Positions 9,589 to 37,318 of a stretch of 64,000 nucleotides of DNA are shown piece by piece. The stretch lies in assembly GCF_030684315.1 (NCBI RefSeq), contig NC_081369.1:2098689-2162688 (forward strand), written 5' to 3'. Position 1 is the first letter of the stretch. Each line of letters opens with the position of its first letter. The notes under the pieces were generated by a model. That model saw nothing but the letters and a program-made list of their open reading frames with translations. It made no database searches and was not told where the DNA came from. This DNA comes from Stegostoma tigrinum. Its lineage: Eukaryota. The translations under genes were made by a program, and so were the position numbers.

Positions 9589-9632
9589 CTGCAGATGTTT
9601 CGTTACCATGCTTGGTAACATCATCAGTACAG
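9589..9632 (-). ncRNA. Minimal hammerhead ribozyme, inverted copy
   Basis: Minus strand CUGUA-CUGAUGA-U-GUUACC-aagcau-GGUAAC-GAAAC-AUC-UGCAG. Stem III is altered by CpG-type decay. Confidence 0.65.
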
Positions 9633-10090
9633 CCTTTGATGAAGCGTTGGTGTTTTTTCCCACCTGGTTTTTAAGCTCTGAGGTTCCACTCCCCTCCATG
9701 GACAGAACCAATGCCATCAACAAGATCCCCTGCAGACACTGTGAGAAACATTACATCAGTCAACCAGGAAGGAAATTAACAACAAGAATACATGAACACC
9801 AAGTGGCTACAAAAAGACATGACCAATACTCACTCATCTCAATCCACATGGACAAGGAGAACCATGGCTTCGACTGGGACAACACCAAGATCCTGGGACA
9901 TGATAGGCAGAGACAAGCACGAGAATTCCTGGAAGCATGGTACTCCATGAAGCATGCTATTAATAACCATATTGAACTTGACCCCTTTTACATTCCATTG
10001 CGGAGGAAACCCGGAAGTGAGGCAATCCATCGCAACGGACCCCAGAGTTTAAAAACCAGACGGGAAAACACACCGACACCTCATCAGAGG

Positions 10091-10134
10091 CTGCACTGAG
10101 GATGTTACCAAGCATGGTAACGAAACGTCTGCGG
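10091..10134 (+). ncRNA. Minimal hammerhead ribozyme in PLE terminal repeat
   Basis: Stem I CUGCA/UGCGG, core CUGAGGA (10096-10102), stem II GUUACC-aagcau-GGUAAC, then GAAAC-GUC. Predicted cleavage after C10129. Confidence 0.8.
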
Positions 10135-17679: not shown

Positions 17680-18390
17680 GTATTGGAGTGCAGGTCCACA
17701 GATCATTGAAGTACCACCACAGGTAGACAAGGTAGTAAAAGAAATCTATGGCATGTTTTCCTTCATTGGAAGGGGCTTTGAGTATAAGGATAGCCATGTT
17801 ATTCCACAGCTTTGTAGAACTTTAGTTAGGCCACACTTGGAATATTAAATACAGTTCTGGTCACCACATTACGAGAAGGATGTGGATGCTTTGGAGAAGG
17901 TACAGAAAAAAAAATACCAGGGTTTTGCCTGGTATGGAGGATTTTAGCTATGATGAAATGTTGGATACACAGCATTTGTTTTGACTGGAGTGCAGGAGGT
18001 TGAGGAGCAACCTGATAGAATTTGGTAAGATTGTGAATAGCATGGATCGAGTGGAAAGTATGAGGCTTTTTTCCCAGGGTGGAAGGGTCAATTACTTGGG
18101 GACACAGGTTCAAGGTGCGAGGGGTGAAGTTTAAAACAGATGTGCAAGTCACATTTTTCACTCAATTGATGATGAGTGCCTGGAGCGTGCTGCCAGAGGA
18201 GGTGGCGGAAGCAGACACAGTAGCAGCATTCAAGAAACACCTGTATGAATACATGAATAGGAAGGGAATAGAGGAATACCAATCCTATAAATATAGGCAG
18301 TTTTAACATGGAAGGGCAATATGTGTTGGTGCAGGCTTGGAGGGCCAAAGAGGCTGTCCTTGTGCTGTATTGTTTGTTGTTCTTTGTCCT
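17680..18390 (+). mobile_element. CR1-type LINE 3' part
   Basis: LVRPHLEY..QFWSPH-like DNA and WSVLPEEV. Confidence 0.8.
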
Positions 18391-20525
18391 TACGGAGGGA
18401 ATTTTGGAATTGTGACCCAGTGACAGTGAAGGACCAGTGATTTATTTCTGAGCCAGGGTGGTGAGTGGCTTAGTAAGGAACTTCTAGATGGTAGGGGGTC
18501 CCGATATATCTGCTGCCTTTGTCCTCTTGGATGGAAATGGTTGTGGCTTTGGAAGGTGCTGTCTAAAGATCATTGGCAAATTTCTGTTATTTAGATAGTA
18601 CACACTGCTGCTATTGAGCATTGGTGATGGAAGGAATGGATGTTTGTGGATGTGGTGCCAACAGAGTGGGTTGCTTTGTCCTGGATGCTATCAGGTGTCT
18701 TCAGGTTGTTGGAGCTGCACCCATCCAGGCAAGTGGGCCAATTCCATCACACTCCTGATTTGTGCCTTGTAGATGCTGGATAGTCTTTAGAGAGTCAGGA
18801 GGTGAGTTACTTGCTACAGTATTCCTAGCCTTTTTGCCACTGTATCATTATGGTGAGTCCAGTTGAGTTTGGGTAATCTCCAGGATGTTGATAGTGGGGG
18901 ACAAATCTTCCACATTATTGTGTAGGTGCCAATATTGTAACTATACTAGAAAAGCTTGGCCTGGACTGCACCAAGTTCTGGAGCACCAGTTGCACGTTGC
19001 CCAGCCCGACCATCAGAAGAGCACAGCATTTTCTACCTATGTTGACCAACAGAAAGGACAGAAACAGAATGAGGAGGAAGAGTAAGTGAAGGAGAGAGAG
19101 CAGGAGATGAAAGAAGAGAGGAATAGAAAACACATTAAGCACTTTTTCAGCCAAACTGACCTTGACTGACTGACTGACTGTAAACCAACAAACACAACCC
19201 CAATCTCACATTCACAAACCTTCCATATCTTTGCTTGCTTCTGTTGCTGACCATCACAGCATCTTCTTGGTAATAATGCTCAACAGAAAATCAATATAAG
19301 CATTGCAAACCTAACTTACAAAGTAGAGCATGCCACACTGCATGCAAATATTAATTGTCATTCTGGTGCCTTTGATGTCTGGGTCTCATGTCTTTTTGTC
19401 TGTTATTGTGTTCCTATGCAATAATCCAGTCCACCAGTTTTAGAAAGGGTATTAACAAGCTGGAGAGGGTTCAGAAAAGACTCAACAGGATGTTGCTGGG
19501 AATGGAAGACTTGAGTTATCGGGGAAGGCCAGTTCAGCTGGGACTTTTTCACTGGAGAAAAGGATAGTGAGGAATGATCTTATAGAAGGTTTTAAAATCA
19601 CGAGGGGTAATGACAGGTGTCTTATCCCTATGATGGGGGATTTCAAGACTAGGGGGCATAATTTTAAGATGAGAAGAGAAAGATTGAAAAATGACATGAG
19701 GGGCAACATTTTTACACAGAGTGGTTTGCATGTTGAATGGGCTTCCAGAGAAAATGATGAATGTGGATTCAGTTACAATGTTTAAAAGACAAAATTACGG
19801 TCGCATGGACTGGTTGGACTGAAGGGTCTGTTTCCATGCTGTATGATTCTATGACTCCCAATACCTGTTGCATGAGTCATGGAAAGTTGTTGCATTTCAT
19901 GCAAGATGACTGCTGCTGTTCTTAGAGTATGACTGTGAGCAGCCTTAGGACCACAAAGTAGGTCTTGCTACTTCACCTTATTTGATGCAGTTGAGGCTGG
20001 TTGGCAGTAAAAGGCACTGATAGTGTGGCACTGTGGAGCATTAAACACAGTAATCCTGAGAAAGGATCTTTGTGCTGTGCTGCCACTTCCTTGTGAAAGT
20101 GCCTTAATAACCGTAGTACTTACTTGGAGGGCTGTGACACACAGCCTGTCATTTTGAACATTGATCTTTGTAGTCATGATGAAAGCAATCTAAGCTTGCA
20201 TGACTGCATTGACCTTTATATAGCTGATATCTGAGCTTCTGCACACCACTGGATGTTGGGCACTTCCTGCTTGTTCTCCCATTTGAAGCTGCTACATTGG
20301 CCATCAGACACAGCTTCATTTTCTGGTCCACAGTAGTCATAATGTAGTTGCCCACTTTTCTTTCTTGCAAGTTTCTAAGCAGAACTCTGTGCCCTTTGGT
20401 GTTCTGACAGGGCAGCAAATGTCTCCTTGTTCAGGCCTGTATCCTCTTATTGTATAATGTTCTGGTCACTATATTACAGGAAAGATGAGCTCACTTTGGA
20501 ATGTATACACAGAAAATGTGAACAA

Positions 20526-21220
20526 TGGGGGAGGTGCTGGCCTGGTGCTATTATCGCTAGACTATTAACCCAGACACTCAGCTAATGTTCTGGGGACCCA
20601 GGTTCAAATCGCACACAACACAATTCAATAAAATATCTGGAATTAAGAATCTACTAATGACTAATGAAATCATTGTCAAATGTCTGATGTCCTTCAGAGA
20701 AGGAAATCTGCCATCCTCAAATAGTCTGACCTACATGTGACTCCAGACCCACAGCAATGTGGTTGACTCCTAACTGTCTTCTAAAATGGCCTGACAAACA
20801 TTCTGATGTACTAATTGCTACAAAGCCTCAAAGATATGAAACTGGACACTTCACCTGGCATCAACCTAGGCACCGGAAAAGACAACAGAAGGAAAAGCCC
20901 TGTTGGCCCTGCAAAATCCTCCTTTCTAACATCTGGGGGTGAGGGCCAAAATTGGGAGACATGTCTCAGAGACTAGTAAAGCAACAGCCTGACATGGTCA
21001 TGCTTGCAGAACTTATACCTTACAGACAATGTCCCAGCCACCACCATCACCCATCCTTGGATATGCTCTGACCCAGCAGCAAGACAGACCCAGCAGAGGT
21101 GGCATCACAGTGCTGTAGAGTCAGGATGGAGTTTCTCTGGGAGTCTTCAACTTGATTCTAAGCCCCATAAATTCTCATTGGTTCAGAATAATGGCCAAGG
21201 AAACTTTCTGCTGACTGATT
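20526..21220 (+). mobile_element. Non-LTR element 5' end: tRNA-like head followed by APE endonuclease N-terminus
   Basis: Head tggcctggtg...ggttcaaatc, then DNA encoding degenerate LSNIWG...RLVKQQPDMVML. Related copies at about 50215-50700 (+) and 30500-30900 (-). Confidence 0.55.
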
Positions 21221-21534
21221 AAGCATGTTGACATTCCTGTGAGCCAAGGACCTGCTTTAAGCCGAACACATATGTTGACGATGATTCCCCAAATGCTCAC
21301 GTTTATGATAATTTCCAGTCCCCTTCTTCCACAAGAGGCTAGTTCTAATCCTTTAGTAACAGCAACTAATTGATAACTAACTAGAGATCAATTATGTTCT
21401 CCTCTAGTCTGTATTCATTAATGCTACAATTGACATTCTGAGGGATATAAATCTTGAATATCATTATAAATTCACCATTATTTATGTTGTTTTGAATCAG
21501 CAGATACATACTTATCTTCTATTTTATTCAGTCA

Positions 21535-21833
21535 TCATAGAATCATGGAAATAGGCTCTTCGGCCCAACAAGTCCACACCGACCTTCAGAGCATCCCACC
21601 CAGACTCATACCCTTGTAACCCACCTAATCTACATATCCCTGAATGCCAATGGCAATTTAGCATGGCCAATCCACCTAACTTGCACATCCTTCGTGGAAA
21701 CCGAAGCACCCGGCAGAAACCCACGCTGACACAGGGAGAATTTGCAAACTCCACACAGACAGTCGCCCGAGGGTGGAAATGACCCCAGTCCCTGGTACTG
21801 TAAGGCAGCAGTGCTAACCACTGAGCCACCGTG
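21535..21833 (-). mobile_element. HE1-type V-SINE
   Basis: Reverse complement of the same SINE head, core and tail. Confidence 0.85.
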
Positions 21834-22562
21834 CTTGCCTCAGAGTCCTGGTATTTCAGTCTGTAAAATGGTCAGATGTTTTATCCTGAAGTTTAGTTTA
21901 TTTGGCAGGATTTTTGGTTTGTTAATCTGGCAGGATGATGTTGAGAGGGTAGGGACAGAGCTACTGCATCTCATCCATTTAGCCACGTGGTGGTAGCAGA
22001 GACCAGCAATGTGAGCTCTTGCTGCCTGAAACTGCAGCCTCTGCTCAGGATTAGTGTTGGTCAGTCAAAACTGAAACAGAAGCTTCAAGTGTCCTGATAT
22101 TCATATACTAGATGAACCAGTATGAAAGATGCACATTTTGAGATCCTTTGCAGGTTTAAACTTCTCATGGGCAATGGTCCTGCATATGAAATCCTTCAGA
22201 AGAGCCTCCAACTTTGAGTTAGAGCAATACACTTCAGAAAGGGTCTGACTCACTTTCCTTGGTGGAAGGATTAAAAGCAGTTTTTCATTAACCACACCAC
22301 TGCCCTCCTTCAACTCCCACTGGACTCTCCAATTCTTCCTTATGATATCCAACTCACCTGGCCAAGACCCCCGACCTGAACCAACAAGCTAACATAACTG
22401 TTCCTCCCCGACTCCCAACCGTGACTCATTCAAACTGTCTCTAGATCTATGACCTGACTGGATAAACACCTGGCCTGACTCAATTACCAGCGTTAATGAC
22501 TCAGTGGTATTTTAACCAAGTGGCCAGCATTGTATATATTGTATAAGCTACTGCAGCACGAT

Positions 22563-22762
22563 TGCTTGGTTAGCACTGTTGCCTCAGCGCGCCAGGACCT
22601 GGGTTCAATTCCAGCCTTGGGCGACTGTGTATGTGGTGTTTGCAAGTCCTCCTTGTGCCTATGTGGCTTTCCTCTGGGTGCTCTATTTTCTTCCCACAGA
22701 CCAAAGATGGGCTGGTTAGGGTGGATTGGCCATGTTAAATTGCCCAGTGTGCATTGTCCACA
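22563..22762 (+). mobile_element. HE1-type V-SINE, partial
   Basis: ggttagcactgttgcctcagcgcgccaggacctgggttcaattcc head and V core. Confidence 0.75.
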
Positions 22763-24779
22763 GGCATACTCATGGCCTTCTGTACCTGTTGGGCCCTTGC
22801 TATTTATTCCTTTGTGGAATGCTGGCATCACTGTTTAGTCCAGGACTTGTTTCCAATTTCTAAGTGCCCTGCAGAGTCAGCCACACTGCTGTCGATCTGG
22901 ATTCACATATCAGCCAAACCAGATAAAGATGGCAGACGTCCTTCCCTGAAAGGTATTGATGAGCCAGCTTTTATTTTGCCGAAATTGGTGTTGGCTATGT
23001 TGTCACTTTTACTGAAACTAGCTTTCAATTCCAAATATTAATTAAATTTATTTTTCACAAGTTGATGTTGTTGGATTGGAGCTCACATCCTCAAATAATT
23101 AGTTTGGACTTGTAGTTTATGGATCCAGCAGCATTACCACAATGTCATCATCTCTTTGCATTAAACCCCAACATTGCACTCTAATTTGAATCTTGTAACT
23201 CGAATTTTGTTATAATGCGCCTTTAAGGGCTAGAACCCTTTCATCTGTCTATTTTGGTTTAATTTCCTTGAACTTGATTCATTTGATTAAACCCTTTTAA
23301 AATTGCACAAAATAGCTTCCCAAATTGGTCTTTTTAGCAGAAGATTCCAATCCAGGAAATTCAAGTTTAATTAAGGTATGTGATTCTGAACAGAAAACCT
23401 AAGCTGATTGTCAGGATGGCAAGCCATGGCTAGTGGAGTACCCCAAAGACCAGTGCTTTGACCCCAACTATTTAAAATCTGTATCAATAATTTGGATGTG
23501 TACACCAAATGTAAAATTTATTTTTTTAAGTTCCTCCCTCAATTACATTTTTCAGTTTATCACTGCTACTGAAATGTTTCCTGCATCTGCTAAAGACTGA
23601 TGCAAAACATCTTTTCAGTTAATCTGACAGTTCCTTATTTATCATTCTTGATTCTCCCACATCACTTTCTAAAGTTTCAATGCTTGTTTTGCTAGCTATA
23701 ATCTTTTTATTCACATGCTTTTTTTAAAAAAATTACTTTCTGTATTTATATTCCTGGCTAGCTTTCCCTTACGGTCTAATTTTTCACTTCTTATTGATTT
23801 TTGGCCACTCTATGCCATTTTTTCATATTCTACCCAATCATCTGACCCGCCAACTATTTTTGAGTAATTATATGAATTTTCCTTTTAGTTTGACACTATG
23901 TTTAATGTTCATATTTAACCAGATCATAGGTCTATCCCTTAGAATATTCTTTCTCAATATAATATATCTATACTGTGTATTTTGAAATATCCAGTTAAAT
24001 GTTTGCTGCTGCATTCCTATTTTCCCTTTAGAAGGTGATGGTGAGCTGCCTTCTTGAAACCTTGTATTCTATTTGGTTTAAATAGACCCATACAAAGACA
24101 CCGAAGGGATAGTGACAGAGTTCCAAGTCAGGGTGGTGAGGGCCTTGGAGGGCCACATCGAGGTGGTGGTACTTCTATATATCTGCAGCCTTGTTCTCCT
24201 AAATAGTAGAGATCATGGCTTTGGATGTTGTTGTCTAAGGAACCTTGATGAATTTCTGCATGGTTCCTTGTAGTTGGTAAATTTTGTTCCTAGTGATAGT
24301 GGAAGGATTCAAAGTTTGTAGATGTGGTGCCAAGCAGGTGACTGCTTTGCCCTCGGTGATGTCTAGCTTCTTGAGTATTGTTAGAGCCGTACTCATTTCA
24401 GCAGGAAATAACTTGCGCCTTCTAGAAGGTGGACAGGATTTAGGGAGTCAAGAGATAAATTACTTACCGCAGGACTCCTAGTCTCTGATCTTTTCTATTT
24501 TTCTATTTATATAGTCAGTCCAGTTCAGTTTCCTGTCAGTAGTAATCCACTGAATGTGGATTCAGTGATGGCAATGTCAAGAGGTGATTGTTGGTTTCTC
24601 TTTTTGGAGATGGTCATTGCCTGGCAGTTGTCATTACTGGAATGTGAATGTCACGAACTGTGAATGTTTCTTGTTAGTATTTGATAAATGGTGACAAGCT
24701 CCTCACATTGACTGCACAGAACCCTGTTTATTGTCCTGCATATGCTTTTAGTGGCTATATAAACCATGAAAATTGAATA

Positions 24780-25400
24780 CTTCCTCCGCCACTGCAAGTT
24801 CTTCTTCACCCGAAATTAGATGTTCCAGACCTGACACTGAGTAAGCAATACAACCATCTTGCTGTGAGCTCTTTGCTGCAGAGAATGCTGGCAATCCCCT
24901 TTACTATACTCACCCTTACTTCACCAATTTCTTTCTTACTCCCTTTCATCAATGGCTTCCTGTCCCACATGCCAGGATCATTTAATTCTCCTTTGTAACT
25001 GTCACTCTCACCCAAACAAGCAGAAAGAACCTCTAACCTGTGGATGATTGGAAAGTCAAGGAACATTGCTCCTTCCTTTGGAGTCCATTAATCTCCTTCA
25101 CTTGTAAACACAAACTACTGTCCCTGAACACTGATCAAATCAGGCGACCAAATCTTAAGGAGTGTCTACCTCTTGGTAGTCGGAATCCATGTAACTTTGT
25201 GACAACCCTTGATGCATCACAGTGTCTGCAGTTCAGTCTCCAGCTTATATAATCTGTGACAAATCTCCTTGAACTTTAAACATTTTCTGCAAATCTGTTT
25301 CTTCGGGATCAAACTGGCATTCAGAAACTCCTGTTTAGTACAACTGTGAGAGATTATGTATCCAGCTATGCTTATTATATCCTTTTTTAAAGAAAATACT
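24780..25400 (-). mobile_element. CR1 ORF1 (SGNH esterase) remnant
   Basis: SIVKGIASILCS...LYCLLSVRS resembles the CR1 ORF1 motif DSIVRG.D..FC...VCCLPGAR. Confidence 0.5.
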
Positions 25401-26384
25401 TCATTATTTCATTTGATTGTATATTTACTTTAAGTATATTGTGCTAACATACCACAAGTTTCTATACTATGTTGAAATTTATAAATAACAAAACTTAGTT
25501 ACTTACCCAAAACTCACCAAGTAACCAACTTCTCATGTAGCAGAACATTAATTAATTCCTGAGGCTGCAAATATTTCAGAACATTAAAATTAAAAGTAAC
25601 ACATTACCTATTTCTCTTCTCCCCCTAACTTCCCTTTATCACTGATCTCTGGCATACTGTTGTAAGACTCGCCAAAGTGCTATGTCCCCCTAAGTTGGCT
25701 AGCTTTGTCTATCTAAAAGGATGAAAAAATGCTGACTCAACCCACTCGATGAGGTGCGATTCAAATGTTATTTTTAAAATAATCTGTTCTTTCACTGGAA
25801 TCCTTATCAAAATCCTAGTTAAACCATGTAACCCAAATATGGAATTTAAACTGTGGTTTCCAGGACAATTCAAACTACAAATGACAAAATAAGATTGTTG
25901 CAAAATAAAGAAGTTCCTATGCAACAAATGCAAATACTAAATGCTAAGTTAAGCCATGTTTCTGAGATGAATTTATATGTCCTAAGGCAAAAGGCCTTTT
26001 TGACCCACTCGACGTGAATCCAGTTGGAGTTGCTTCTTAATTAAGCCGAATTGCTCTCTCATAGGAGACTCTTTTTAAATACTTATACAAGACTGGCAAC
26101 TAGGGACTGTGAATTTTCAATCTCAGGTTCATGGAAATTATTAACTACAAATAAAACTGGATTAGTACAACATGAATATGTAGAAATTCTTACCAAGTGG
26201 TAACTACTGTCAGCATTCAGTCTTAAAGAAGATTAACCGTTAACTCAGCATCAGCGAAACCAAACTCCTGCAGCAGTCCTCCACAAACAAGCACATAAAC
26301 CTTCAATGACTGTAATTGATGGGGTGACTATAGAAGTTATTGAAGGGTTCCCATATCTCAGCAGTTATTTTCATTGAGGTAGGT

Positions 26385-27974
26385 GATAAGATATAAGGTA
26401 AGGAATAAGGTAGGTGAGCTTGCAGCATGGCTAGGTACCTGGGACTTTGATGTTGTGGCCATTTCGGAGACATGGATAGAGCAATCAGGACTGGATGTTG
26501 CAGGTTCCAGGGTTTAGATCTTTCATAAAGGGCAGGGAAGGTGGTAAAAGAGGGGGAGGTGTGGCTTTGTTAGTCAAGGGCAGTATATCAATGGCTGAAA
26601 GAACTTTTGAGGAGGACACGTCTACTGAGGTGGTATGGACTGAGGTCAGAAACAGGAGAGGAGAGGTAACACTGCTGGGAGATTTTTATAGGCCTCGCAA
26701 AGTTCCAGGGATGTGGAGGAGAAGATTGGCAAAACTATTCTGGGTATGAGTGAAAGGAACAGGGTGGTCATTATGGGAGACTTTAACTTCCCCAACATTG
26801 ACTAGAAATGCTATTACTCAAGTATGTCGGATGGATCCGTTTTTGTCCAATGTGTGCAGGACAATTACCTGACACAGTATGTTGAAGGGCCAACAAGAGG
26901 GGAGGCCACACTGGGTCTGGTACTTTGTAATGAACCAGGCCAGGTGTTTGACTTAGTAGTAGGTGAGCACTTTGGAGAGAGTGACCATAATTCGGTTACG
27001 TTTTGTTTAGCGATGGAAAGGGATAGGAACATGCCACAGTTCAAGAGTTATAGATGGGGGAAGGGCAATTATAATGCAATTAGGCAAGACTTAGGAGGCA
27101 TAGAATGGGGTAGCAGGAGATGGGGACAATCAAAATGTGGAGCTTGTTTAAGGAACAGATATTGTGTGCCCTTGATAGGTATGTTCCTGTCAGGCAGGGA
27201 GGAAGTGATAAACTAAGGGAACCGTGGTTTACTGAAGAAATTGTATCTCTTGTTTAGTGGAAGAAGGAGGCTTATGTGACGATGAGACATATGGTTCAGA
27301 TGAGGCGATGGAGAGGCGGGATTTAAAGACAGAGTTAAGAACAGCAAGGAGGGGACATGAGCAGACGTTTGCCGGTAGAATAAAGGAGAACCCTAAAGCT
27401 TTCTATAAGTATGTGAGGAATAAAAGGATGACTAGGGTAAGAATAGGGCCAGTCAAAGACAGAAGTGGGAAGTTGTGTGCGGACCCTGTGGAGATCAGAG
27501 AGGTGCTAAACGAATATTTCTCATCTGTTTTCACTCAGGAAAAGGAGAATATTGTAGAGGGTAAGACTGAGATACTGGCTATTAGACTTAAAAGGATTGA
27601 GGTTAGTAAGGAGGAGGTGTTATCAATTCTAGAAGGTGTGAAGGTAGATAAACCTCCTGGCCAGATGGGAGCTTTTCCAAGGATTCTCTGGGAATCTAGG
27701 GAGGAGGTGGCAGAGACTTTGGCCTTGATCTTTGAGTCCTCATTGTCTGCAGGTTTAGTACCAGAGGACTGGAGGATTGCAAATGTTGTGCCCTTGTTCA
27801 AGAAGGGCAGTAAAGATGATCCAGGTAATTATAGACCAGTGAGCCTTACGTCTGTGGTAGGAAAAATTTTGGAAAGGATTATAAGAGATAGGATTTATAA
27901 TCATGTAGCAAGCAACAATTTGATTGGAGATAGTCAACATGGATTCATCAAGGGCAGGTCATGTCTCACAAACC
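26385..27974 (+). mobile_element. CR1-type LINE ORF2 5' part, abruptly 3'-truncated
   Basis: APE motifs (GGGVALLV, GDFN, SDHN) and RT start (NYRPVSLTS, QHGF), ending at GRSCLTN. Confidence 0.92.
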
Positions 27975-29176
27975 ATGAGCTTCAATATTATTGATAAGTC
28001 TTTTATCCAATAGCCTGTCATTTTCTTCTCAAAAATTACCTAGAAGACATTTCCATTGCATTTTACTTAATGATTTCCAACCATTGTATTTCCATCCATT
28101 ATTTCCACCATGTGTTTCTCTCTATATTGTACCTGCATTTTCTTCCTTGGTGACAACTGTCATGAACTACCAAAGAAGTCATTGTATAGTCTTAGATTGT
28201 TTCTTTACCTCCAAGCATCTATCACTTTCTTTAACTCCAATATGCCTCACTCTGCCTTCCTTGGAGCTTAAAGTTTAAATGGTAGTCAGAACTCTTTGTT
28301 CTTTTTTTTACATTACTGCATTGCATTCCCTCAAAAAGAAAACTGTGGATGTTGGAAATCAGGAACGAAAACAGAAATTGCTGGAAAAACTCAGCAGGTC
28401 TGGCTGCATCTGTGGACAGAAAACAGACTTAACATTTTAGGTCCACTGGCCCATCTTCAGAATGATTACTGCTAGGAGAAGGTTGGTATATATGCTAAAG
28501 TTGGGGTGCAGAAAAGGGAGGAGTGAATGATAAGTGAAGATGGAGAGAAAGAGAGAAAGGGGGCAAAAAAGCAATTGAGCAGACAAAGGAATGCCTAAAT
28601 TCAGTCTATCCAGCAATGTGTATAATGCTAGACATAAATCCAGGGAACCAAATAAAATTTAGAAATCTATTCTCCTTTTCTGGGTCTCTCCAATTTGCTG
28701 CCAAGACAATTTTAAACCTCTCTGAAGCAGAACACTAATTAGATTTTATATTCAATTAATTTAAATGTATTTCTACAGGACACACTTAAAATTTTATTAC
28801 AACCAGGAGAATTTTCATCTGATATTACTCTGCAAACAATAACATTCTCAATGTGCTTCTTTTGGAAATTGCTTCAATATTTATATGTTTTTAAAATCAT
28901 TTTATCGTCTCCTTCACCCCTAGCTTCCTTTATCATTCTATACAGTACAATATTGTTGCCTAAATTTAGAAAGATGAATGCATCCTGCCACATTATTCAT
29001 GTTATGTTAAGTCTACAGACAATTCTGAAATATGAGTGGATTTGAAAATTCCACAGTACTACCAAAATTAAATACAAAATACTCTTTATATATTATAAGT
29101 AACCCAATATCTGTAGTTACAGCTCAACTACTCCTGATCAAACCATATAAATGCGTCATGTTTGTTGTAATTTTAC

Positions 29177-29482
29177 CTACGTTGTCGACAATGTAACTGC
29201 AATTTCCTGGAGCAGTGATAGAAATGTGATAGACTTGACAGGTGTAAACTGTGCCATGCTCAATTGGCTGTGCCTCTTCTATGGAACTGATGACTTCATA
29301 CAGTCCGTTTGCCATTTCCCGCTGTACAGTTGTAATTCCTGTCAGAATTCTAGTGCCGTTTTTATGCCAGGTAACATTGAATTCCTTAGGGTGAAACTTA
29401 GCCGTTTGACACTGGAGTCTCAAAAAGGTAGATGAAGACTTTTGGAATGATGTAGAGACAATCTTCAGGGGTACAGGAGCAG
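29177..29482 (-). CDS. Ig C1-set domain exon
   Basis: Acceptor aaatttAG (29484-29483) and donor G|GTAAAA (29176); 306 nt, phase 1-1. LQCQTAKFHPKEFNVTWHKNG, NGLYEVISS and YTCQVYH match the C1 (Ig/MHC) [FY]xCx[VA]xH signature. Confidence 0.93.
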
Positions 29483-31618
29483 CTAAATTTTAAAAAAAAT
29501 TAAAAAGAGGATATTTTTAACTGCTTTATTTCATTTATATTGCTCAGCAATCATGTCAAGGCTTGGTAGTTGGATTTTAGATCAATATTTCATGTGAATG
29601 GGTTCCAAAATAATTCCTTCCTTGCTGTCCAGCACTGAGGTGAAAACGATTGCTCTTCACATCGTGGAAACAGTTACTAATCAAAACCTTAGTAAGCCCG
29701 AATAAATTGAGTGGGTGGTGTCCTGAGGAAGTCACCCAACATGAAAAATTAACTCTGATTATTTTTTTCTCACGCACAGAAGCTGCCAGACCTGCTTAAT
29801 TTTTCCAGCTACTTCTGTTTTTGTGCTTGTTTAAACATTTTACAGCAGGAATTAAACCAATTTTCCTTTGCGGAGTCTTTGCAAGGCTTCCTTGAGGAAT
29901 ACGTTTCAAATTTAGACAGATTTCTGTTGATTTTCACAGGTTTCTTCCTCATTCTCAACAATTCCTTTGTTGTATGTTGCAGTAATGCAGTAACACCACT
30001 CGAAGCATTTGTACTGAATTATATATATTTGTTTGTTTGCTTTCCTTTTTTTGAAATAGGTTAAGGGACTAATCCTAAATATTATCTGCCTATGTGTTAA
30101 ATATTTTGTTTTGGAATATATAAATAAGACTTTTAAAAAATTGACGATAAATCTCTCATGTGCTGTTTCAAAAGTGGAAACATAGACATTGTAGTCAATC
30201 CTTTTCCCTCAACCACACATGGTATGCTCTCTGTTTTTCCAGCATGCCCAGTTGATCATGTTAAGATCCAGCAACAGCTCCCTTAGATTGCGATGAGCAA
30301 TATCTGTCTTGCATTGTTTTACGTTATTGAAGGTTCATTGTTCTAGCTTCAATACTGAGTGCCTATGGAACACATGGTGAACTTTTAGTATCATAGAGCC
30401 ATGGTGCAGAAGGAGGCTATTCAGCTGATTATATCTGTACCAGCTGTATTATCTAGTTCCAATTTTGTGGCTTGTTTGCATAACCCTATGCAAAAATGTC
30501 CAAACACATTTTTTGCACTCATGGGGCATGGGTGTCGCTGGCTAACAATGACCTTATTGTCCATTCCTAGTTGCCTTAGAACTGAATGTCTCGATAGACC
30601 ATTTCAGAGGGCAGTTAAAAGTCAACCACATTGTGTGGGTCTGGAGTCATATAGACACCAAACCAAGCAGATTTCCTTCTTTACTTGTTGGTGAATTAAA
30701 CATGAGTGAACGAGATCAGTTTTTCCAATGATCATCAATGGTTGCATTGTCATCAGTCAATTCTTAATTCTGGAGTTTTGTTAACTGAATTCAAATTCCA
30801 TCCTTCTGCTGTGGTGGGACTTGAACCCGGATCCCCAAACATTAAGCTGAGCTTCTGGATTAAAAATCTAGCAATAATACCACTGTCGCCAGGGCATCAC
30901 CTCCCCACACCTCCTGAATTTGTCAATTGAACTTGCCTCTGCCACATTTCCAGGCAGTGCGTTCCACAGCCTAACAGCTTCCTGTGTGAATGTGATTTGT
31001 TTTCTCGCATCACCTTTGCTTCATTGGAGGCCATCTCATTCATGTACCTTTTACCAACAGAAACAGGTTTGTCCTTTCTATTCTGTCCAGCACACTTATG
31101 TTTTTGAAAATCTCAATCAGATCTCCTTTCAAACTTCTTCTTTCCAGAAAGAACAGTCCCAACTTCTTCAAGCTATTCTCTTAGCTGAAGATTCTCATCT
31201 CTGGAACCATTTTAATAACTCACTTCTGCCCTCTCTGCAATGTGTTCACATCATTCCGATAATGTGGATCACAACTATACACGTTACTCCAGATGAGATC
31301 TAATAAGTGTCTTGTACAATTTCAACATCACTTCCATTTCTTGAGACAGTTTTGAAGAACCTAAATGATCTTTGAGTAGGAAGTCTGCTGGAGATCAGAA
31401 ACCATAATATGGTAGCTGTTAGCTTTCAGTCTGAGACTGAGCAATTTGGATTGGAGCAATTGTGCCAAACTTAAATAAGGGTAGTTAAGTCAGAATGACG
31501 GCTGAGTTGTTTAGTGTGGGCTAGGAAAATAATTTAGCAGAAAAGATGGTTGAGGAGCAACAGCAAGCATTTAAAAAAATAACTCATGACTTCATTACAA
31601 AGAATATCTCCCGTTAAG

Positions 31619-31927
31619 GGGCGGCATGGTGGCTCAGTGGTTAGCACTGCAATCTAACAGCACCAGGAACCTGGGTTCAAATCCACCCTTGGGCGACTGC
31701 CTGTGTGGAGTTTGCACGTTCTCCCTGTGTTTGCGTGGGTTTCCTCCGAGTGCTCCGGTTTCCTCCCACAGTCCAAAAATGTGCAGGTTCGCTGGATTGG
31801 CCATGCTAAATTGCCCGTAGTATTCAGGGGTGTGTGGGTTATAGGGGGATGAGTCTGGGTGGGACATATCAAGGGGCCGTGTGGACTTGTTGGGCCGAAA
31901 ATCCTGTTTCCACACTGTAGGGAATCT
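31619..31927 (+). mobile_element. HE1-type V-SINE
   Basis: gggcggcatggtggctcagtggttagcact (A box), ggttcaaatcc (B box) and V core. Confidence 0.88.
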
Positions 31928-32998
31928 TAAGGAAGAAGGTTACTCGGAAGGACGTTCAACAAGCATGGCCGAAGGGCCTGTACTATGCTGTAATGTTCTA
32001 TGTTCTATTCTATGTTCTATGTTATCTGGGAAAGTTAAGGATGGTATCAATTTCAAAGAAAATACATACAATTTGACAAATCTTAGCTGCAAACCAGTGA
32101 ATAGGAATGATTTAAAATCTGTAAAAAGATACAAAAATAAAATTAAGAGTGATCAAATAAACTATGAGGGGAAATTAACAAGCATGTAGTAAGGGCTTAT
32201 TTAAATATATTTTAAAAGGGGCAAGGGATTCCAAAATGAACACTAGTTCCATAAACAAAAAGGCGGGGTTGACAAAATAGGAATGAGGAATCTGTAAATA
32301 GCAAATTGAAAAAAAATACTCTGCATCAATTTTCACAGCATAAGGCATGTGGTGGTAGTGAAAATAAACACAGCAATTACCATGAATGTAGTGGGGGACC
32401 AAATAAGTTTCAAGGTTGATGAATGCCCTGGACCTGATGGGATGTATCCAAGGATTTTAAAGATGTAAATGCATATATAATTGATAAATTGATAGAACTC
32501 CTTGAATCCTTAGTTCATGGTCAAGTCCCAAACAATTAGAAAACTGCCAATGCAACATTCTTATTCAGGGAGGGAGAAGGAAAAAATGTTTATGTCACCA
32601 ATGGTGTCCCACAGGGATTGGTGCTGTTTGCACTTTTGTTTGCCATTTAAATAAATGATTTAGATGAAAATGTAGAAGGTATGGTTAGTAAGTTAATGGA
32701 TGACACCAAGATTGGTGGTATAGTGACTAGCAAAAAATGTTATCTAAGAACAAAAAGAGATATTGATGAGGTGGGTCAATGTGTTAATGAGTGACAGGTG
32801 CAGTTTAAGTTGGATAAATGTGACATATTCCATTTGGTAAAATAAACAAGGGCAGGAATTATACAATTAAAAGTGGGGCCTTGGGAAGTGTTGTACAATA
32901 GACAGACCTGAGGTTCAGGTACGTGATTCATTGAAGTTTGCATCACATATAGATAAGGTGATTAAGAAGTCATTTAATATGTTTGTTTTCATTGCTCA

Positions 32999-34653
32999 GG
33001 CTAAATGATTATTTCTCATCTGTTTTCACTGAGGAACAGGAGAATATTGTAGAGGAGATGACTGAGTTATGGGCAACTAGAATTGAAAGGATTAAGCTTA
33101 GTAAGGAAGAGGTGTTATCAATTCTAGAAGCTGTGAAGGTAGATAAACCCCCTGGCCAGATGGGATTTTTCCAAGGATTCTCTGGGAAGGTAGGGAGGTG
33201 GTGGCGGAGCCTTTGGCCTTGATCTTTGAGTCATCATTGTCTACAGGTTTAGTACCAGAGGACTGGAGGATTGCAAATGTTGTGCCCTTGTTCAAGAAGG
33301 GCAGTAGGGATGACCCAGGTAATTATAGACCTTACGTCTGTGGTAGGAAAAGTTTTGGAAAGGATTATAAGAGATAGGATTTATAATCATGTAGCAAGCA
33401 ACAATTTGATTGGAGATAGTCAGCATGGATTCGTCAAGGGCAGGTCGTGTCTCACAAACCTCATTGAGTTTTTTGAGAAGGTGACCAAGCATGTGGATGA
33501 GGGTAGGGCAGTTGACGTGGTGTACATGGACTTCAGTAAAGCCTTTGATAAGGTTCCACACAGTAGGCTATTGGAGAAAATACAGAGGCACGGGATTGAG
33601 GGAGATTTAGCAGTTTGAATTAGAAACTGGCTTTCTGTAAGAAGGCAATGAGTGGTGGTTGATGGAAAATATTCAGCCTGAAGTCTGGTCACTAGTGGTG
33701 TGCCTCAAGGATCTGTTTTGGAACCGCTGCTGTTTGTCATTTTTATAAATGACTTGGACGCAGGCATAGGTGGATGGGTTAGTAAGTTTGCAGATGACAC
33801 TAAAGTCGGTGGAGTGGTGGACAGTGTGGAAGAATGTTGCAGGTTGCAGGGAGACTGGATAAACTGCAGAATTGGGCTGAAAGGAGGCAAATGTTCACTG
33901 CGGATAAATGTGAGGTGATTCACTTTGGGAAGAATAATAGGAAGGCAGAGTACTGGGTCAATGGAAAGATTTTTGGTAGTGTGGATGTGCAGAGGGATCT
34001 TGGTGTCCATGTACATAGACCCTCGAAAGTTGCCACCGAAGGCTTACGGTGTGTTAGGTTGTATTGGTAGAGGGTTTGAATTCCGGAGCCATGATGTCAT
34101 GTTGCAACTGTACAAAACACTAGTGCGGCCTCATTTGGAATATTGCATACAGTTCTGGTCGCCCCATTACAGGAAGGATGTGGAAGCATTGGAAAAGGTG
34201 CAGAAGAGATTTACCAGGATGTTGCCTGGTCTGGAGTGCAGGCCTTATGAAGAAAGGCTGAGGGACTTAAGTCTGTTCTCATTGGAGAGAAGGAGGCTAT
34301 GAGGGGGTTTAATAAAGACATACAAGATGATCAGAGCATTACATAGGGTGGACAGTGAGAGTCTTTTTCCGAGGATGATGACTTCAGCTTGTACAATGGG
34401 GCAAATTGAGGGGTGATATATTTAAGACAGCTATCAGAGGCAGGTACTTCACTCAGAGAGGGGTAAGGGCGTGGAATGCCCTGTCTGCCAATGTAGTTAA
34501 CTCAGCCACATTAATGACATTTAAACAGTCCTTGAATAAGCATATGGATGATGATGGGATAGTGTGGGGGGAGGGGGTTAGATTAGTTCACAGGTCAGTG
34601 CAACATCAAAGGCCGAAGGACCTGTTCTGCACTGTATTGTTCTATGTTTTATG
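32999..34653 (+). mobile_element. Younger CR1-type LINE nested in an older CR1 (about 32590-35270)
   Basis: RT motifs DFSKAFDKV, PQGSVL, FADD and ttctatg tail. Host CR1 sequence resumes at 34655. Confidence 0.92.
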
Positions 34654-36452
34654 TAGGCCTTTAATTATAGGAGTTGGGACAATATATTGAGGTTGTACAG
34701 GATATCAGTGAGGCCTCTTCTGCAGTTCTATGTCCAGTTCTGGTCACCCTGTTATAAGAAGGACATTATTAAGCTTGAGAGGGTTCAAAAGAGATTGACC
34801 AGTGTGTTGCCAGGATTGGAGGGCTTTAATTATGGAGAGAGGCTGGATCAGCTGGGACTCTTTTTCACTGGAGCATAGGAGATTATGGGTGACCTTATGG
34901 AAATTTTTAAACCATGAGGGCTATTGAAGAGGTGAGTAGCAGGTGTCTTTTCCATGGGGTCGGGGATTTCAAGAGTAGGAGACTCATTTTTAAGGTGAGA
35001 AGAGAGAGATTTACAAAAGACATGAAGGGCAATTTGTTTTATGCAGGGAGTGCTTTGTTTGTGGAATGAGCATCCAGAGGAAGCAATGGATGCCGGTGTA
35101 GTTTACATTGTTTGAAAGACATTTGGATATGTACATGAATAAGAAATATTTGGAGGGAAGGGGCCAAATGTTGGCAGGTGGCACTTGTTTAGTTCGGGAT
35201 TTTGGTCAGCACAGACTGGTTTGACTTAAGGGCTTGTTTTCATGCTGGATGATCTATGACTGTATGACAGGCTGGTTAACTTAGCTGTTAATATGAAATG
35301 TTAGAGTCTGTTTTATACTTATGACTTGGATGATGGAATTGTGTATTCCATTGCCAAGTTTGTTGATGGCACACAGAAAATAAATGGGTAGGCCAGTGTT
35401 GAGGCTGACACTGTAAGTCTTTAGAGAGATACGAACAGGCTAAATGAATGGTCAAAAACTTGACAGATGGAATATAATGCGGACCATATGAGGTCATGCA
35501 TGTCAACAGGAAGAACAGAAGAGCTGAATATTATTTAAAATGGGAAATATTACAGAAAGCTGCAACACAGAGTGATTTAGGCATTCCTAGTGCATGGATC
35601 ACAAACAGCTAACAACCTTGTTCAATCAGTTAAAGGAAAGGCAAATCGCGTGATCTTATTTCAAAAAGAATGAGGCACATTTTGTTAAAACAATACAAGC
35701 GAGACACATCTAAAGCAGCTCATTTTCCCTTATCTAAGGAAAGATGTATTGGCATCAAATTCAGTTCAGAGCAGGTCCACTGAGATGTTTCCAGGTATGG
35801 GGGATTTTAATGTAAAGAGAGGTTGAGAGTTTAGGTTTGCAATCATTTGAGTTTAGTAGAATAGTAGGCAACCTTGTTGAAACAGATATGATTCGTAGAG
35901 ATTCTTAAAGATTCAATGGCCTCCCAGAGCATTTTCTGGCAGGTTGTTTCTCATTGTGGTATAATGTAAGACCAAAGGGCATCAACTCAGAGCAAGGACT
36001 CACTCACTTAAGACAGACAAGGGAACATTTATTATATTGGATGGTAGGAAATCCATGGAATTTTTTTGGCAGATGACTGTTGAGAGTGATTTAATTCAGA
36101 ACTGACATGGAGAGATGTTTAGTCAATGGTTAGTGGGATACGGCAGGAAAATGAAGTTGAAGGCATCAGATCAACCATGATCTCATTGAACAGAGGAACA
36201 GACTTGATGGACAGAATGTCAAACATCTGCTCTTTCAACTTACGGTCTTATTTTGTGATTTTACCAAGTGACCGTCAATGGCACAAAAACAGAAGTTGCT
36301 GGAAAAGCTCAGCAGGTCTGGAAGCATCTGTGAAAAAAAGATCAGAGAAAATATTTCGGGTCCGATGGCCGCTCCTCAGAACTGTTCTAAGGCCTACTCC
36401 TGTTCCATTGTCTCCTTAAACGCTCTACGTTTATCATTTTTGCAACACTTAC

Positions 36453-36764
36453 TATATACAAGAAGTCGGAATCCGGTTCCTTTCACAACTGTTTGATGAT
36501 GATATTTGATGACACAGTAATATATTCCAACATCTGCAACAGTCACATTCAGAACATGAAGGTAGGCGCCGCCTCTCCTCACATCGAGACTTTTTCTGCC
36601 GTTTGCTTGCAGGAAAGTCTCGTTACCGTCTTTCCACCAGTAAGCGAATACCGCCGAATGTTTGAGATGGAAAGGGAAAGGACATCGGAAGGTAACGTTA
36701 CCACCCCGGTGCGTCGTCGTTTGTGCCACATTTCTGTCATATTCGCCAGAGCTGCACACAGAAA
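36453..36764 (-). CDS. Ig V-type (germline VJ-joined) domain exon
   Basis: Acceptor ttttattgatAG (36766-36765) and donor GTAAGT (36452); 312 nt, phase 1-1. Translation has B-strand VTFRC, C-strand YWW, F-strand DVGIYYC and a J-like G strand KGTGFRLLVY. Confidence 0.93.
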
Positions 36765-37089
36765 CTATCAATAAAATGCCCACAATTAAATCTCATCCAG
36801 AGTTAAAAAAAGACACTGCTAAAAATGCTATTATGCTTCCCATCATTTGTTACCTTAGTAGTGCTGACTAACCATACAAGTTAAATCATCCTGCTAACGA
36901 ATGTGTTTCCAGATTAAAATATCATAACTAATGTTGCTTTTCATGTTCACATCATTCTTTTCTGCAAAAGGAAACTTAATACAAAAACACACAGATGAAA
37001 CTACAGCAGCAGAAAGCTACTTTATGTAGGACATTGAATCCATACACAAGTTCTTGTTCAGTGAAGTTTAGTAATTAACATAAATACTA

Positions 37090-37240
37090 AATGGAAAGGA
37101 GCAGTCGACGTTTCGGGTATCGCACTTCTTCAGGGCTCCAGTGATACCCGAACCGTTGATTGTTCCTTTCCTCCAGAAGCTGTCTGGCATGCTGAGTTCT
37201 TCTCCTGTTCATCGAACTGCATCTGCAGTTTGTTTTTGCC
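37090..37240. mobile_element. Short palindromic PLE derivative in the leader-V intron of the Ig gene
   Basis: Minus strand CTGAAGAAGTGCGATACCCGAAACGTC with inverted flanks. Confidence 0.65.
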
Positions 37241-37263
37241 TCTAATGAAATCTACATGCCTAC

Positions 37264-37318
37264 CAGCACACAAAATTCCCAGGAAAGGTACGTTGCAAAG
37301 TAATCGGATCTTCAACAT
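37264..37318 (-). CDS. Leader (signal peptide) exon of a non-rearranging VJ-C1 Ig-superfamily gene
   Basis: ATG at 37318 gives MLKIRLLCNVPFLGILCA plus G, then donor GTAGGC at 37263 (phase 1). Upstream acceptor tttccatttctAG at 37349-37348 suggests a further 5'UTR exon. Splices in frame to the V exon. Confidence 0.8.

What the first reader, a model, noticed from the sequence alone, without database searches (positions are those of the whole stretch)
29177..37318. Intact non-rearranging, antigen-receptor-like VJ-C1 gene hidden among retroelements
Seen: three minus-strand exons with canonical phase-1 splice sites join into an open 224-codon frame: MLKIRLLCNVPFLGILCA|VSVCSSGEYDRNVAQTTTHRGGNVTFRC...DVGIYYCVIKYHHQTVVKGTGFRLLVY|TAPVPLKIV...LQCQTAKFHPKEFNVTW...YTCQVYHISITAPGNCSYIVDNV. 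The J-like GxG strand is in the same exon as the V, and I see no RSS there. Known: a VJ-type V plus a C1 domain is the architecture of Ig light chains and TCR chains. Among non-rearranging genes it is limited to a few families such as SIRP, tapasin, B7-H6/NCR3LG1 and PRARP/VJC1-type genes, which are discussed as relatives of the pre-RAG receptor. Inference: this is a shark member of such a family, possibly uncharacterised.
Basis: partly seen in the sequence, partly recalled or inferred. Interest (0 to 1): 0.85.

Follow-up and report, generated by a model that had tools for sequence, protein, structure and literature searches.

The report
Shark non-rearranging V-C1 receptor gene fragment
The three exons are real and encode the outer part (leader, antibody-like variable domain, constant domain) of a germline-fixed shark immune receptor from a large, unnamed shark, ray and chimaera family, but the membrane-anchor exon that its closest relatives have is not in this window.

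Summary
Three minus-strand exons (37318-37264, 36764-36453, 29482-29177) have canonical phase-1 splice sites. They read as leader, a single-exon V domain with a J-like G-x-G strand (Pfam V-set 5.8e-9), and a C1-set domain (2e-11). No RSS is present.

The frame does not end in a stop. It ends at another phase-1 donor, so "intact" is not shown. The conserved transmembrane exon of the closest relatives is absent from the 29 kb downstream.

Both domains are sister (100/99 support) to Chiloscyllium punctatum XP_072403667.1, an "uncharacterized" V-C1-TM protein. That protein has an arginine-bearing membrane helix and a short tail.

The wider family is found in sharks, rays, skates and Callorhinchus. 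Pipelines label it SIRP-alpha-like, tapasin-related-like, NCR3LG1-like and so on. It mixes ITIM-tailed and charged-TM short-tailed members, some with near-identical ectodomains, which is a paired-receptor design.

It is not a rearranging receptor. It is not shown to be a SIRP or UrIg member.

Expression evidence is indirect: exon-limited contigs from a related organism only.

This scan had already found the same family on other DNA of this genome.

Verdict: an ordinary new member of a poorly described family. Interest is moderate to low.

The parts
37264..37318 (-). Exon 1: start codon and most of a split signal peptide (18 codons + 1 base), with donor CTG|gtaggc
   Evidence: The same leader/V split position is seen in the orthologue P0001 and across the family alignment.
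36765..37263 (-). Intron 1 (499 bases, phase 1), a leader intron as in Ig/TCR V genes
   Evidence: gt...ag ends.
36453..36764 (-). Exon 2: a single-exon VJ-type variable domain. It has C27 and C83 with 55 residues between them, a YWW core, DxGxYYC, a J-like G95-T-G97 ... LLV strand, and three N-x-T sites.
   Evidence: translation. (V-set 5.8e-9). AF2 pLDDT 88.8, strands A' B C D E F G, G broken at the G-x-G, no C'' strand; fold matches to VL, VNAR and I-set; no RSS.
29483..36452 (-). Intron 2 (6970 bases, phase 1) carrying reverse-transcriptase-like retroelement fragments
   Evidence: splice ends. RT-like tblastn matches at about 32678-32821 and 33769-33920.
29177..29482 (-). Exon 3: a C1-set constant domain (C24, W38, C81, H85; FHP, GLYEV and YTCQV motifs). 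It ends at a phase-1 donor GTAG|gtaaaa, not at a stop.
   Evidence: C1-set 2e-11. AF2 pLDDT 92.1. MHC class II beta2 and IgNAR C1 as top folds; exon-limited contigs from a related organism.
1..29176 (-). Downstream 29 kb searched for the missing TM/cytoplasmic exon(s). None was found that resembles the clade's conserved TM or the family's ITIM tails.
   Evidence: HMM of the conserved TM exon against all six frames, best E 0.3 on the wrong strand.

Best explanation
The three exons are the 5' part (split leader, germline-joined VJ-type V domain, one C1 domain) of a non-rearranging IgSF surface-receptor gene. It belongs to a large multigene family of sharks, rays, skates and chimaeras. The family is built as V-C1-TM with either a long ITIM/ITSM tail or a short tail. 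The short-tailed forms have an arginine at the outer end of the membrane helix and Asp/Asn/Glu-His at the inner end. This is a paired inhibitory/activating receptor design like SIRP-alpha/SIRP-beta.

The window's gene is the counterpart of Chiloscyllium punctatum XP_072403667.1, which is in the short-tailed, arginine-TM subgroup.

Shown here: exon structure, domain types, folds, absence of RSS, family and clade placement.

Inferred:
- The V domain (short, VNAR-length, with a long F-G hairpin) binds a ligand.
- The full protein is anchored by a TM exon lying beyond the window.
- It signals by pairing its TM arginine with an ITAM adaptor, opposing ITIM-tailed relatives that recruit phosphatases.
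For: - Exons and splice phases.
- Pfam V-set and C1-set.
- AF2 models with pLDDT 88.8 and 92.1. C1 fold nearest MHC II beta2 and IgNAR C1. V fold tied between VL, VNAR and I-set.
- Exhaustive search with the V exon. The best hit, P0001, is 74% identical in V and 82% in C1. At least 48 clusters at 50% identity carry both domains.
- All 30 representatives I looked up by name, and all 20 named hits, are chondrichthyan.
- Separate V and C1 trees both put the window exon as sister to P0001 with 100/99 support. In the V tree it sits inside a starred 10-row clade.
- All invariant and nearly invariant family residues are kept in the window exons.
- The TM motif of the clade is conserved among Chiloscyllium, Scyliorhinus and Heptranchias.
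- ITIM and arginine-TM forms with near-identical ectodomains occur in Heptranchias (P0169/P0174) and Mobula (P0071/P0176).
- Contigs from small runs of a related organism (about 95% identical) cover exon 3 only. One starts exactly at the acceptor 29482 and carries 97 letters that do not fit the flanking intron.
Against: - No TM or cytoplasmic exon was found in 29 kb downstream.
- No RNA run of the window's own organism is on record, so no splice junction of this locus was seen directly.
- The runs of the related organism are only guessed to be RNA. One of them has a contig running unspliced across the exon-3 donor.
- No protein 90% or more identical to the window exons came back from any search, so the gene may be unannotated or not called.
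- The C1 of the window lineage carries 11 derived changes against 2 in the orthologue, which could mean relaxed constraint.
- Adaptor pairing and ligand binding are pure inference from orthologue sequence.
Confidence: 0.7

Rival explanations
1. It is a truncated or decaying duplicate (an orphon or young pseudogene). It kept leader, V and C1 exons but lost its membrane-anchor and tail exons, and is no longer a working receptor.
For: - No TM exon in 29 kb downstream, even with a clade-specific HMM.
- C1 changes are 11 window-derived against 2 orthologue-derived (sign test about 0.02).
- Exon 3 differs from the related organism about as much (about 5%) as the adjoining intron does (about 7%).
- No own-species RNA.
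- The surroundings are full of retroelement debris.
Against: - Both domain exons are open.
- All splice sites are canonical.
- Every family-invariant residue is kept.
- V-domain changes are symmetric, 10 against 8.
- A counterpart in a related organism gives exon-limited contigs in very small runs, which suggests transcription and splicing.
- Shark introns of more than 29 kb are plausible, given that intron 2 is already 7 kb.
Confidence: 0.2
2. The locus makes a secreted V-C1 protein. Transcripts read through the exon-3 donor, add 17 codons and stop, which gives a soluble decoy or opsonin-like form instead of, or beside, a membrane form.
For: - Reading through the donor gives a short open tail, then a stop.
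- One contig of run X2 runs unbroken from exon 3 into the intron (28591-29441), and X1 has a contig at 28658-28810.
- Several family gene models end shortly after C1 without a TM (P0048, P0087, P0101, P0122).
Against: - The unbroken contig can be pre-mRNA or DNA, because the run kinds are guesses.
- There is no canonical AATAAA just before 28658.
- The TM-less models may be incomplete predictions.
- The donor GTAG|gtaaaa and its phase are conserved with the orthologue, which splices to a TM exon.
Confidence: 0.1
3. It is a relic close to the pre-RAG antigen-receptor precursor (UrIg/UrIg2-like), that is, a true non-rearranging antigen-receptor chain and not an innate paired receptor.
For: - Single-exon VJ with a split leader and a C1 domain, the features stressed for UrIg and UrIg2 (PMC12227049).
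- The V fold matches VL and VNAR as well as anything else.
- The family profile hits UrIg2 (9dmx) at 1.2e-35.
Against: - The UrIg2 score comes mainly from its three C domains and is no better than ordinary Ig chains.
- UrIg2 V is not among the 60 best PDB matches of the window V.
- UrIg and UrIg2 have 3 to 11 C domains, while the orthologue here has one.
- The closest relatives carry ITIM tails or a charged TM.
- Linkage to the MHC or to the Ig/TCR complex was not tested.
Confidence: 0.07
4. It is a genuine member (co-orthologue) of the vertebrate SIRP family, as the pipeline names suggest.
For: - Many family members are auto-named SIRP-alpha-like or SIRP-beta-1-like.
- The family profile aligns over the whole V plus first C1 of human SIRP-alpha (2wng, 2.3e-30) and SIRP-gamma.
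- The Atlas puts the C1 exon next to SHPS1 fragments.
- The paired ITIM / charged-TM design is shared.
Against: - Antibody chains and UrIg2 score as well or better against the same profile.
- SIRP V is not among the best PDB matches of the window V.
- Family members have one C1 (P0090 alone shows a second C1-like stretch), not the V-C1-C1 of SIRP-alpha.
- The pipeline names are inconsistent, with six different families used.
- A search with an ITIM tail found no SIRP.
Confidence: 0.1

Closest known systems
Chondrichthyan V-C1-TM receptor family known only from automatic RefSeq names (e.g. Chiloscyllium punctatum XP_072403667.1 'uncharacterized protein'; Heptranchias, Heterodontus, Scyliorhinus, Mobula and Callorhinchus 'SIRP-alpha-like / tapasin-related-like / NCR3LG1-like')
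   Same: Same exon plan (split leader, VJ exon, C1 exon, all phase 1). Same invariant residues. Both domains group inside it with full support.
   Different: The window holds no TM or tail exon. The window's C1 has evolved faster than the orthologue's.
SIRP-alpha / SIRP-beta paired receptors of mammals
   Same: VJ-type V followed by C1-set. Inhibitory ITIM-tailed and activating charged-TM members with similar ectodomains. The family profile aligns across the V and first C1 of 2wng.
   Different: SIRP-alpha has V-C1-C1, while this family has V-C1 (P0090 alone shows a second C1-like stretch). Sequence similarity is no higher than to Ig chains. CD47 binding is unknown here. Orthology is not shown.
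UrIg and UrIg2, non-rearranging shark antibody-like genes (PMC12227049; J Immunol 2023, cited in PMC10751288)
   Same: Single-exon VJ, split leader, C1-type constant domain, found in elasmobranchs, not rearranged.
   Different: UrIg and UrIg2 have 3 to 11 C domains and form Fc-like dimers. UrIg is described there as expressed mainly in liver, and UrIg2 has a TM and cytoplasmic domain. The V of this gene does not match UrIg2 V above background. The relatives here are ITIM / charged-TM receptors.
PRARP genes of birds, reptiles, amphibians and fish (Fu et al. 2019, cited in PMC10751288)
   Different: Not tested here. No PRARP sequence was available to any tool, and the paper is not in the searchable library.
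IgNAR variable domain (VNAR) and Ig light-chain V
   Same: The AF2 model of the V exon aligns to VNAR and V-lambda at Z 11.2-12.6 over about 90 residues. It has VNAR-like length (55 residues between the cysteines), no C'' strand and a G-x-G bulge in strand G.
   Different: No RSS and no rearrangement. I-set domains score equally well, so the fold match does not show kinship.
B7 family (PD-L1, B7-H6/NCR3LG1, CD276)
   Same: V plus C ectodomain with phase-1 exons. PD-L1 V is the best V-set match of the window V by sequence in the PDB (about 1e-5). Some family members are auto-named NCR3LG1-like or CD276 homolog.
   Different: The constant domain here is clearly C1-set (2e-11) and only weakly CD80-like C2 (0.007). 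ITIM or charged-TM tails are receptor-like, not ligand-like.

Membership tests
Rearranging antigen receptors (Ig, TCR) | V and J in separate segments flanked by RSS (heptamer, 12/23 spacer, nonamer) | tested here: not met
   V and the J-like strand are in one exon. No RSS-like site in or beside the exon.
Rearranging antigen receptors (Ig, TCR) | V-set domain with G-x-G bulge followed by a C1-set domain | tested here: met
   Pfam V-set and C1-set. AF2 strand G broken at G95-T-G97. C1 fold.
Chondrichthyan V-C1-TM 'SIRP-alpha-like' multigene family | Family-invariant residues in V (G20, C27, W42, R56, D77, G79, Y81, C83, G95, V102) and in C1 (P2, P4, C24, T26, F29, P31, W38, G59, L60, S65, Y79, C81, V83, H85) | tested here: met
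   Alignments A2 and A3 and translations.
Chondrichthyan V-C1-TM 'SIRP-alpha-like' multigene family | Groups inside the family in trees of each domain | tested here: met
   V and C1 trees: sister to P0001 with 100/99 support. V sits inside a starred 10-row clade. No outgroup families were included.
Chondrichthyan V-C1-TM 'SIRP-alpha-like' multigene family | TM exon and either an ITIM/ITSM tail or an arginine-TM short tail | tested here: not met
   Not found in the window's 29 kb downstream. It may lie beyond the window.
SIRP family | V-C1-C1 ectodomain | tested here: not met
   The orthologue P0001 and nearly all relatives go V-C1-TM with one C1. P0090 alone shows a second C1-like stretch. No second C1-like exon in the window.
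SIRP family | Closer in sequence to SIRPs than to other V-C1 proteins | tested here: inconclusive
   Against the family profile, SIRP-alpha scores 2.3e-30, but antibody chains and UrIg2 score as well or better. The window V does not list SIRP among its 60 best PDB matches.
SIRP family | CD47 binding; synteny with SIRP loci | not testable with these tools
   No vertebrate genome context tool was open.
UrIg / UrIg2 | Single-exon VJ with split leader | tested here: met
   Feature as described in PMC12227049.
UrIg / UrIg2 | Three or more C1-type domains after the V; V and C domains cluster with UrIg | tested here: not met
   One C1 in the orthologue. UrIg2 V is absent from the best matches of the window V. 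UrIg itself was not available for comparison.
UrIg / UrIg2 | Linkage to the MHC class III region or to the Ig/TCR complex | not tested
   The window holds no other gene, only retroelement fragments.
PRARP | Sequence kinship with chicken PRARP genes | not testable with these tools
   No PRARP sequence or paper text was reachable.
Tapasin / TAPBPL | Large N-terminal domain before the Ig domains | tested here: not met
   The leader is followed directly by the V domain. Orthologue length is 292 aa.

The most novel reading that the evidence does not exclude
The family to which this locus belongs would be an undescribed, ancient paired activating/inhibitory receptor system of cartilaginous fish. It would be built on an antigen-receptor-type VJ-C1 ectodomain with a VNAR-length V. 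Its arginine-TM clade (to which this gene belongs) would be conserved across several shark orders. If it proved to be the cartilaginous-fish sister of SIRP/PRARP-type genes, or to map to an MHC paralogous region, it would add a third non-rearranging VJ-C1 lineage, beside UrIg/UrIg2 and NCR3, to the debate on what the RAG transposon invaded.
Probability: 0.25. Interest if true: 0.6.

Novelty: new member of a known kind. Interest (0 to 1): 0.35.

Why it matters
Non-rearranging genes with a germline-joined VJ domain next to a C1 domain are the raw material in models of how antibodies and T-cell receptors arose. They are also where paired activating/inhibitory receptors are studied.

This locus adds one more, apparently unannotated, member to a large shark, ray and chimaera family that exists in databases only under inconsistent automatic names. 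It falls in the subgroup with a conserved arginine-bearing membrane helix.

By itself it changes little. It is incomplete in the window, has a clear orthologue in RefSeq, and the scan has met the family several times. Its value is as one data point for a proper description of that family: gene count, clades, selection, map position and ligands.

Tried and rejected
- **TM/tail exon.** I searched by a hydrophobicity and Ig-pattern scan of all minus-strand ORF pieces. I also ran tblastn with nine full-length relatives and with seven tails at permissive settings, and an HMM of the conserved TM exon against all six frames. There was no credible hit. The best tblastn hit (19127-19026) is a leucine-rich stretch without the motif.
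- **Own-species RNA.** No RNA holder is on record. It showed only repeats, exon 3 and a small contig at 28658-28810.
- **Non-chondrichthyan relatives.** The two word-indexed searches (P0001; profile A1) and the Atlas returned no named non-chondrichthyan relative. A search with the ITIM tail of P0024 found only itself. These blanks say little, because the index favours close kin.
- **Literature.** Searches for VJ-C1, PRARP, and SIRP in sharks found nothing describing this family. The library lacks most subscription papers.
- **Fold searches.** They cannot discriminate V-set kin: VL, VNAR, TCR V, I-set and TREM-like domains are tied.
- **Joined model.** Exons were handled apart by reference, and the natural orthologue P0001 served as the full-length proxy.
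Full report
**1. Observation**

On the minus strand, an ATG at 37318 opens an 18-codon hydrophobic leader that ends at CTG|gtaggc (37264). After a 499-base intron, tgatag|TT starts a 312-base exon (36764-36453) that ends at ATA|gtaagt. After a 6970-base intron, a good polypyrimidine tract and aatttag|CT start a 306-base exon (29482-29177) that ends at GTAG|gtaaaa.

All junctions are phase 1.

Pfam scores exon 2 as V-set (5.8e-9) and exon 3 as C1-set (2e-11). The window has no N and no second Ig-like exon.

A scan for heptamer / 12 or 23 spacer / nonamer finds nothing at the V exon. It finds one chance-level site deep in intron 2, against 16 such sites in the whole window on both strands.

The frame does not end in a stop. 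It ends at a phase-1 donor, so more exons must follow.

**2. The domains**

Each exon was used by reference.

*V exon.* With a 39-row family alignment, AlphaFold2 gives the V exon pLDDT 88.8. The strands are A', B, C, D, E, F, G. Only one residue stands where C' would be, there is no C'' strand, and strand G is broken at G95-T-G97, the J-type bulge.

- Foldseek ties I-set domains, CRTAM, BTLA, PD-L1 V, a light-chain V and an ancestral VNAR at about 1e-6.
- VIA-align ties V-lambda, a TCR V, many VNARs, contactin and titin at Z 11.2-12.6 over about 90 residues.
- By sequence, the best PDB V-set match is PD-L1 V at about 1e-5, after multi-domain I-set proteins.

*C1 exon.* It folds with pLDDT 92.1. 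It matches MHC class II beta2 domains (TM about 0.8) and IgNAR C1. By sequence it matches Ig CH domains, MHC class I alpha3, UrIg2 C3 and SIRP-alpha domain 3 at 1e-8 to 1e-11. The Atlas puts it beside C1-set clusters, including SHPS1 fragments.

**3. Relatives**

An exhaustive HMMER pass of 1.84 billion representatives with the V exon gives one hit below 1e-30. This is P0001, 292 aa, Chiloscyllium punctatum XP_072403667.1, 'uncharacterized protein'. It is 74% identical in V and 82% in C1, with splice-equivalent domain borders.

At least 48 further 50%-identity clusters carry both domains. I looked up names for 30 representatives, and 20 more hits came with names from a profile search. Every one is a shark, ray, skate or Callorhinchus protein.

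Their automatic names disagree with one another:
- SIRP-alpha-like
- SIRP-beta-1-like
- tapasin-related-like
- NCR3LG1-like
- CD276 homolog
- Ig lambda-1-like
- H-2 class I alpha-like
- HLA-DO beta-like

Such scatter is what one expects when no named family is a clear orthologue. Several members of one species sit on one chromosome-scale contig (Heterodontus, Heptranchias, Scyliorhinus, Mobula), so the family is clustered.

The family consensus keeps a canonical J-like motif (N-G-T-G-S/T-x-L-x-V) and the C1 hallmarks.

**4. Tails**

After C1, members have one of two endings:
- a plain TM and a 75-190-residue tail with repeated ITIM/ITSM-like motifs (L-T-Y-A-A-L, T-V-Y-A-x-T), or
- a short tail behind a TM that begins with an arginine and ends with Asp/Asn/Glu-His.

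Heptranchias P0169 (ITIM) and P0174 (arginine-TM) have nearly identical V and C1 domains. So do Mobula P0071 and P0176. This is the signature of paired inhibitory/activating receptors.

**5. Placement of the window gene**

Separate maximum-likelihood trees of V and of C1 both put the window exon as sister to P0001 (100/99). Scyliorhinus torazame P0161 is next. In the V tree this sits inside a starred 10-row clade that also holds Heptranchias, Heterodontus, Pristis, Hemitrygon and Mobula proteins.

In Chiloscyllium, Scyliorhinus and Heptranchias this clade shares a strongly conserved TM exon with P-V-H-L-I-Y-R-S at its start and I-I-F-D/N-H at its end.

The trees contain no outgroup families. 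They show placement inside the family, not the family's position among IgSF genes.

**6. What is missing**

Nothing in the window resembles that TM exon or the ITIM tails. This holds for the ORF-piece scan, tblastn with whole relatives and with tails, and a TM-exon HMM over six frames, whose best E was 0.3 and on the wrong strand.

Either the next intron exceeds 29 kb or this copy has lost its 3' exons.

Using five clade members as reference, the window lineage has 11 derived C1 changes against 2 in P0001. In V the counts are 10 and 8. Every family-invariant residue is nevertheless kept.

No protein 90% or more identical to the window exons appeared in any search, so the gene seems not to be represented in the protein collections.

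**7. Expression**

No run on record as RNA holds exon 3. Four runs of organism B hold it fully and are probably the genome's own DNA. Four small runs of organism A hold 13-17% of its words.

Laid on 23600-29599 at 80% likeness:
- Run X1 (106 million letters) has a 399-letter contig that matches 29181-29482 with 16 differences. It ends exactly at the acceptor and has 97 further letters that do not fit the flank.
- X3 has a 309-letter contig on 29170-29478.
- X2 has a 1053-letter contig running unbroken over 28591-29441.

Runs this small could not assemble single-copy DNA of a shark genome at depth 5-8, so these are probably transcripts of the counterpart gene in a close relative, spliced at exon 3 and partly unspliced. 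That is an inference. The run kinds are guesses, and the loose letters were not shown.

Within 5.6 kb downstream of exon 3, no other non-repeat block stands out except a small contig at 28658-28810.

**8. Mechanism proposed**

Shown: a germline-fixed VJ-C1 ectodomain gene part, in a family with opposed tail types.

Inferred from the orthologue: a type I membrane receptor whose V domain binds a ligand. The V is short, with three N-glycan sites and a long F-G hairpin. Its TM arginine pairs with an ITAM-bearing adaptor, as in the activating partners of mammalian paired receptors. ITIM-tailed relatives would recruit SH2 phosphatases.

A secreted read-through form (17 extra codons, then a stop) is possible but weakly supported.

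**9. Comparison with known systems**

- *Rearranging receptor.* It is not one: there is no RSS.
- *SIRP.* It works like SIRP-alpha/beta but fails the V-C1-C1 test. It is not closer to SIRPs than to Ig chains. Against the family profile, Ig chains score up to 2.8e-38, UrIg2 1.2e-35 and SIRP-alpha 2.3e-30, and multi-domain chains are favoured by summed scores.
- *UrIg/UrIg2.* It shares the single-exon VJ and split leader stressed for these genes (PMC12227049). It lacks their many C domains and shows no special V similarity.
- *PRARP.* These genes, cited in PMC10751288, could not be compared.
- *Literature.* I found no paper on this family in the searchable library. That library omits most subscription journals.

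**10. Earlier notes of this scan**

These are AI notes, used as leads only.

- The family was already reported on other DNA of this genome, and follow-ups reached the same reading: 's1-881642' and 's1-881498' describe a large uncharacterised SIRP-like V-C1 family of sharks, rays and chimaeras.
- Two others propose kinship with PRARP, or a range reaching birds ('s1-881641', 's1-881487'). I could not test this. My nearest hits were all chondrichthyan.
- Notes 's1-882326' and 's1-881827' place further V(J)-C1-TM genes 25 kb and 135 kb beyond the window's end, so this gene probably lies in a cluster.
- Some notes call the genome zebra shark. I did not verify the species. The closest protein, from Chiloscyllium, fits an orectolobiform shark.

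**11. Verdict**

This is a real, well-formed 5' part of a non-rearranging V-C1 receptor gene. It is a new, apparently unannotated, member of a known but undescribed family. Intactness and expression at this locus are unproven. Interest is 0.35.

Noticed in passing
window 28658-28810: A 183-letter contig of run X1 (related organism, depth 4) lies in the intron 370-520 bases downstream of exon 3. It has 30 unaligned letters at the end that points downstream in gene orientation. It could be pre-mRNA or the end of a read-through transcript. No canonical AATAAA lies just before it.
   Followed up: partly
window 24000-24199, 26400-27999, 28200-28599: Summed contig depths in the thousands to about a million, in all four runs, mark high-copy repeats. 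The middle block overlaps a reverse-transcriptase ORF (27257-27994, + strand).
   Followed up: partly
window 27257-27994 (+), 38239-38907 (-), 52621-53286 (+), 61156-61866 (+): ORFs with RVT_1 or endonuclease-RT Pfam matches.
   Followed up: partly
P0023 (XP_067905015.1) and P0003 (XP_067905013.1), Heterodontus francisci: These RefSeq models carry long N-terminal extensions before the leader. For P0023 the extension matches reverse-transcriptase fragments in this window (tblastn down to 3.8e-14), so the model likely has a retroelement piece fused on. The P0003 extension was not identified.
   Followed up: partly
P0097 (XP_038661939.1), Scyliorhinus canicula: The model contains the stalk-TM-ITIM tail block twice in nearly identical form. 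It is probably two neighbouring genes or a duplicated exon block merged into one prediction.
   Followed up: no
P0169/P0174 (Heptranchias perlo) and P0071/P0176 (Mobula): Pairs of ITIM-tailed and arginine-TM short-tailed proteins have almost identical V and C1 domains (end branches 0.02-0.1). This suggests recent duplication or gene conversion between paired receptors.
   Followed up: partly
P0001 C-terminus: The RefSeq orthologue ends in a V-G-Y-D-A-L motif (ITIM-like YxxL) even though it has an arginine TM. The older GenBank model of the same gene (P0151) has a different last exon, so the tail is uncertain.
   Followed up: no
window 9589-10134: Another first-stage note reports minimal hammerhead ribozymes on both strands of a Penelope fragment. 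It is not part of this finding.
   Followed up: no
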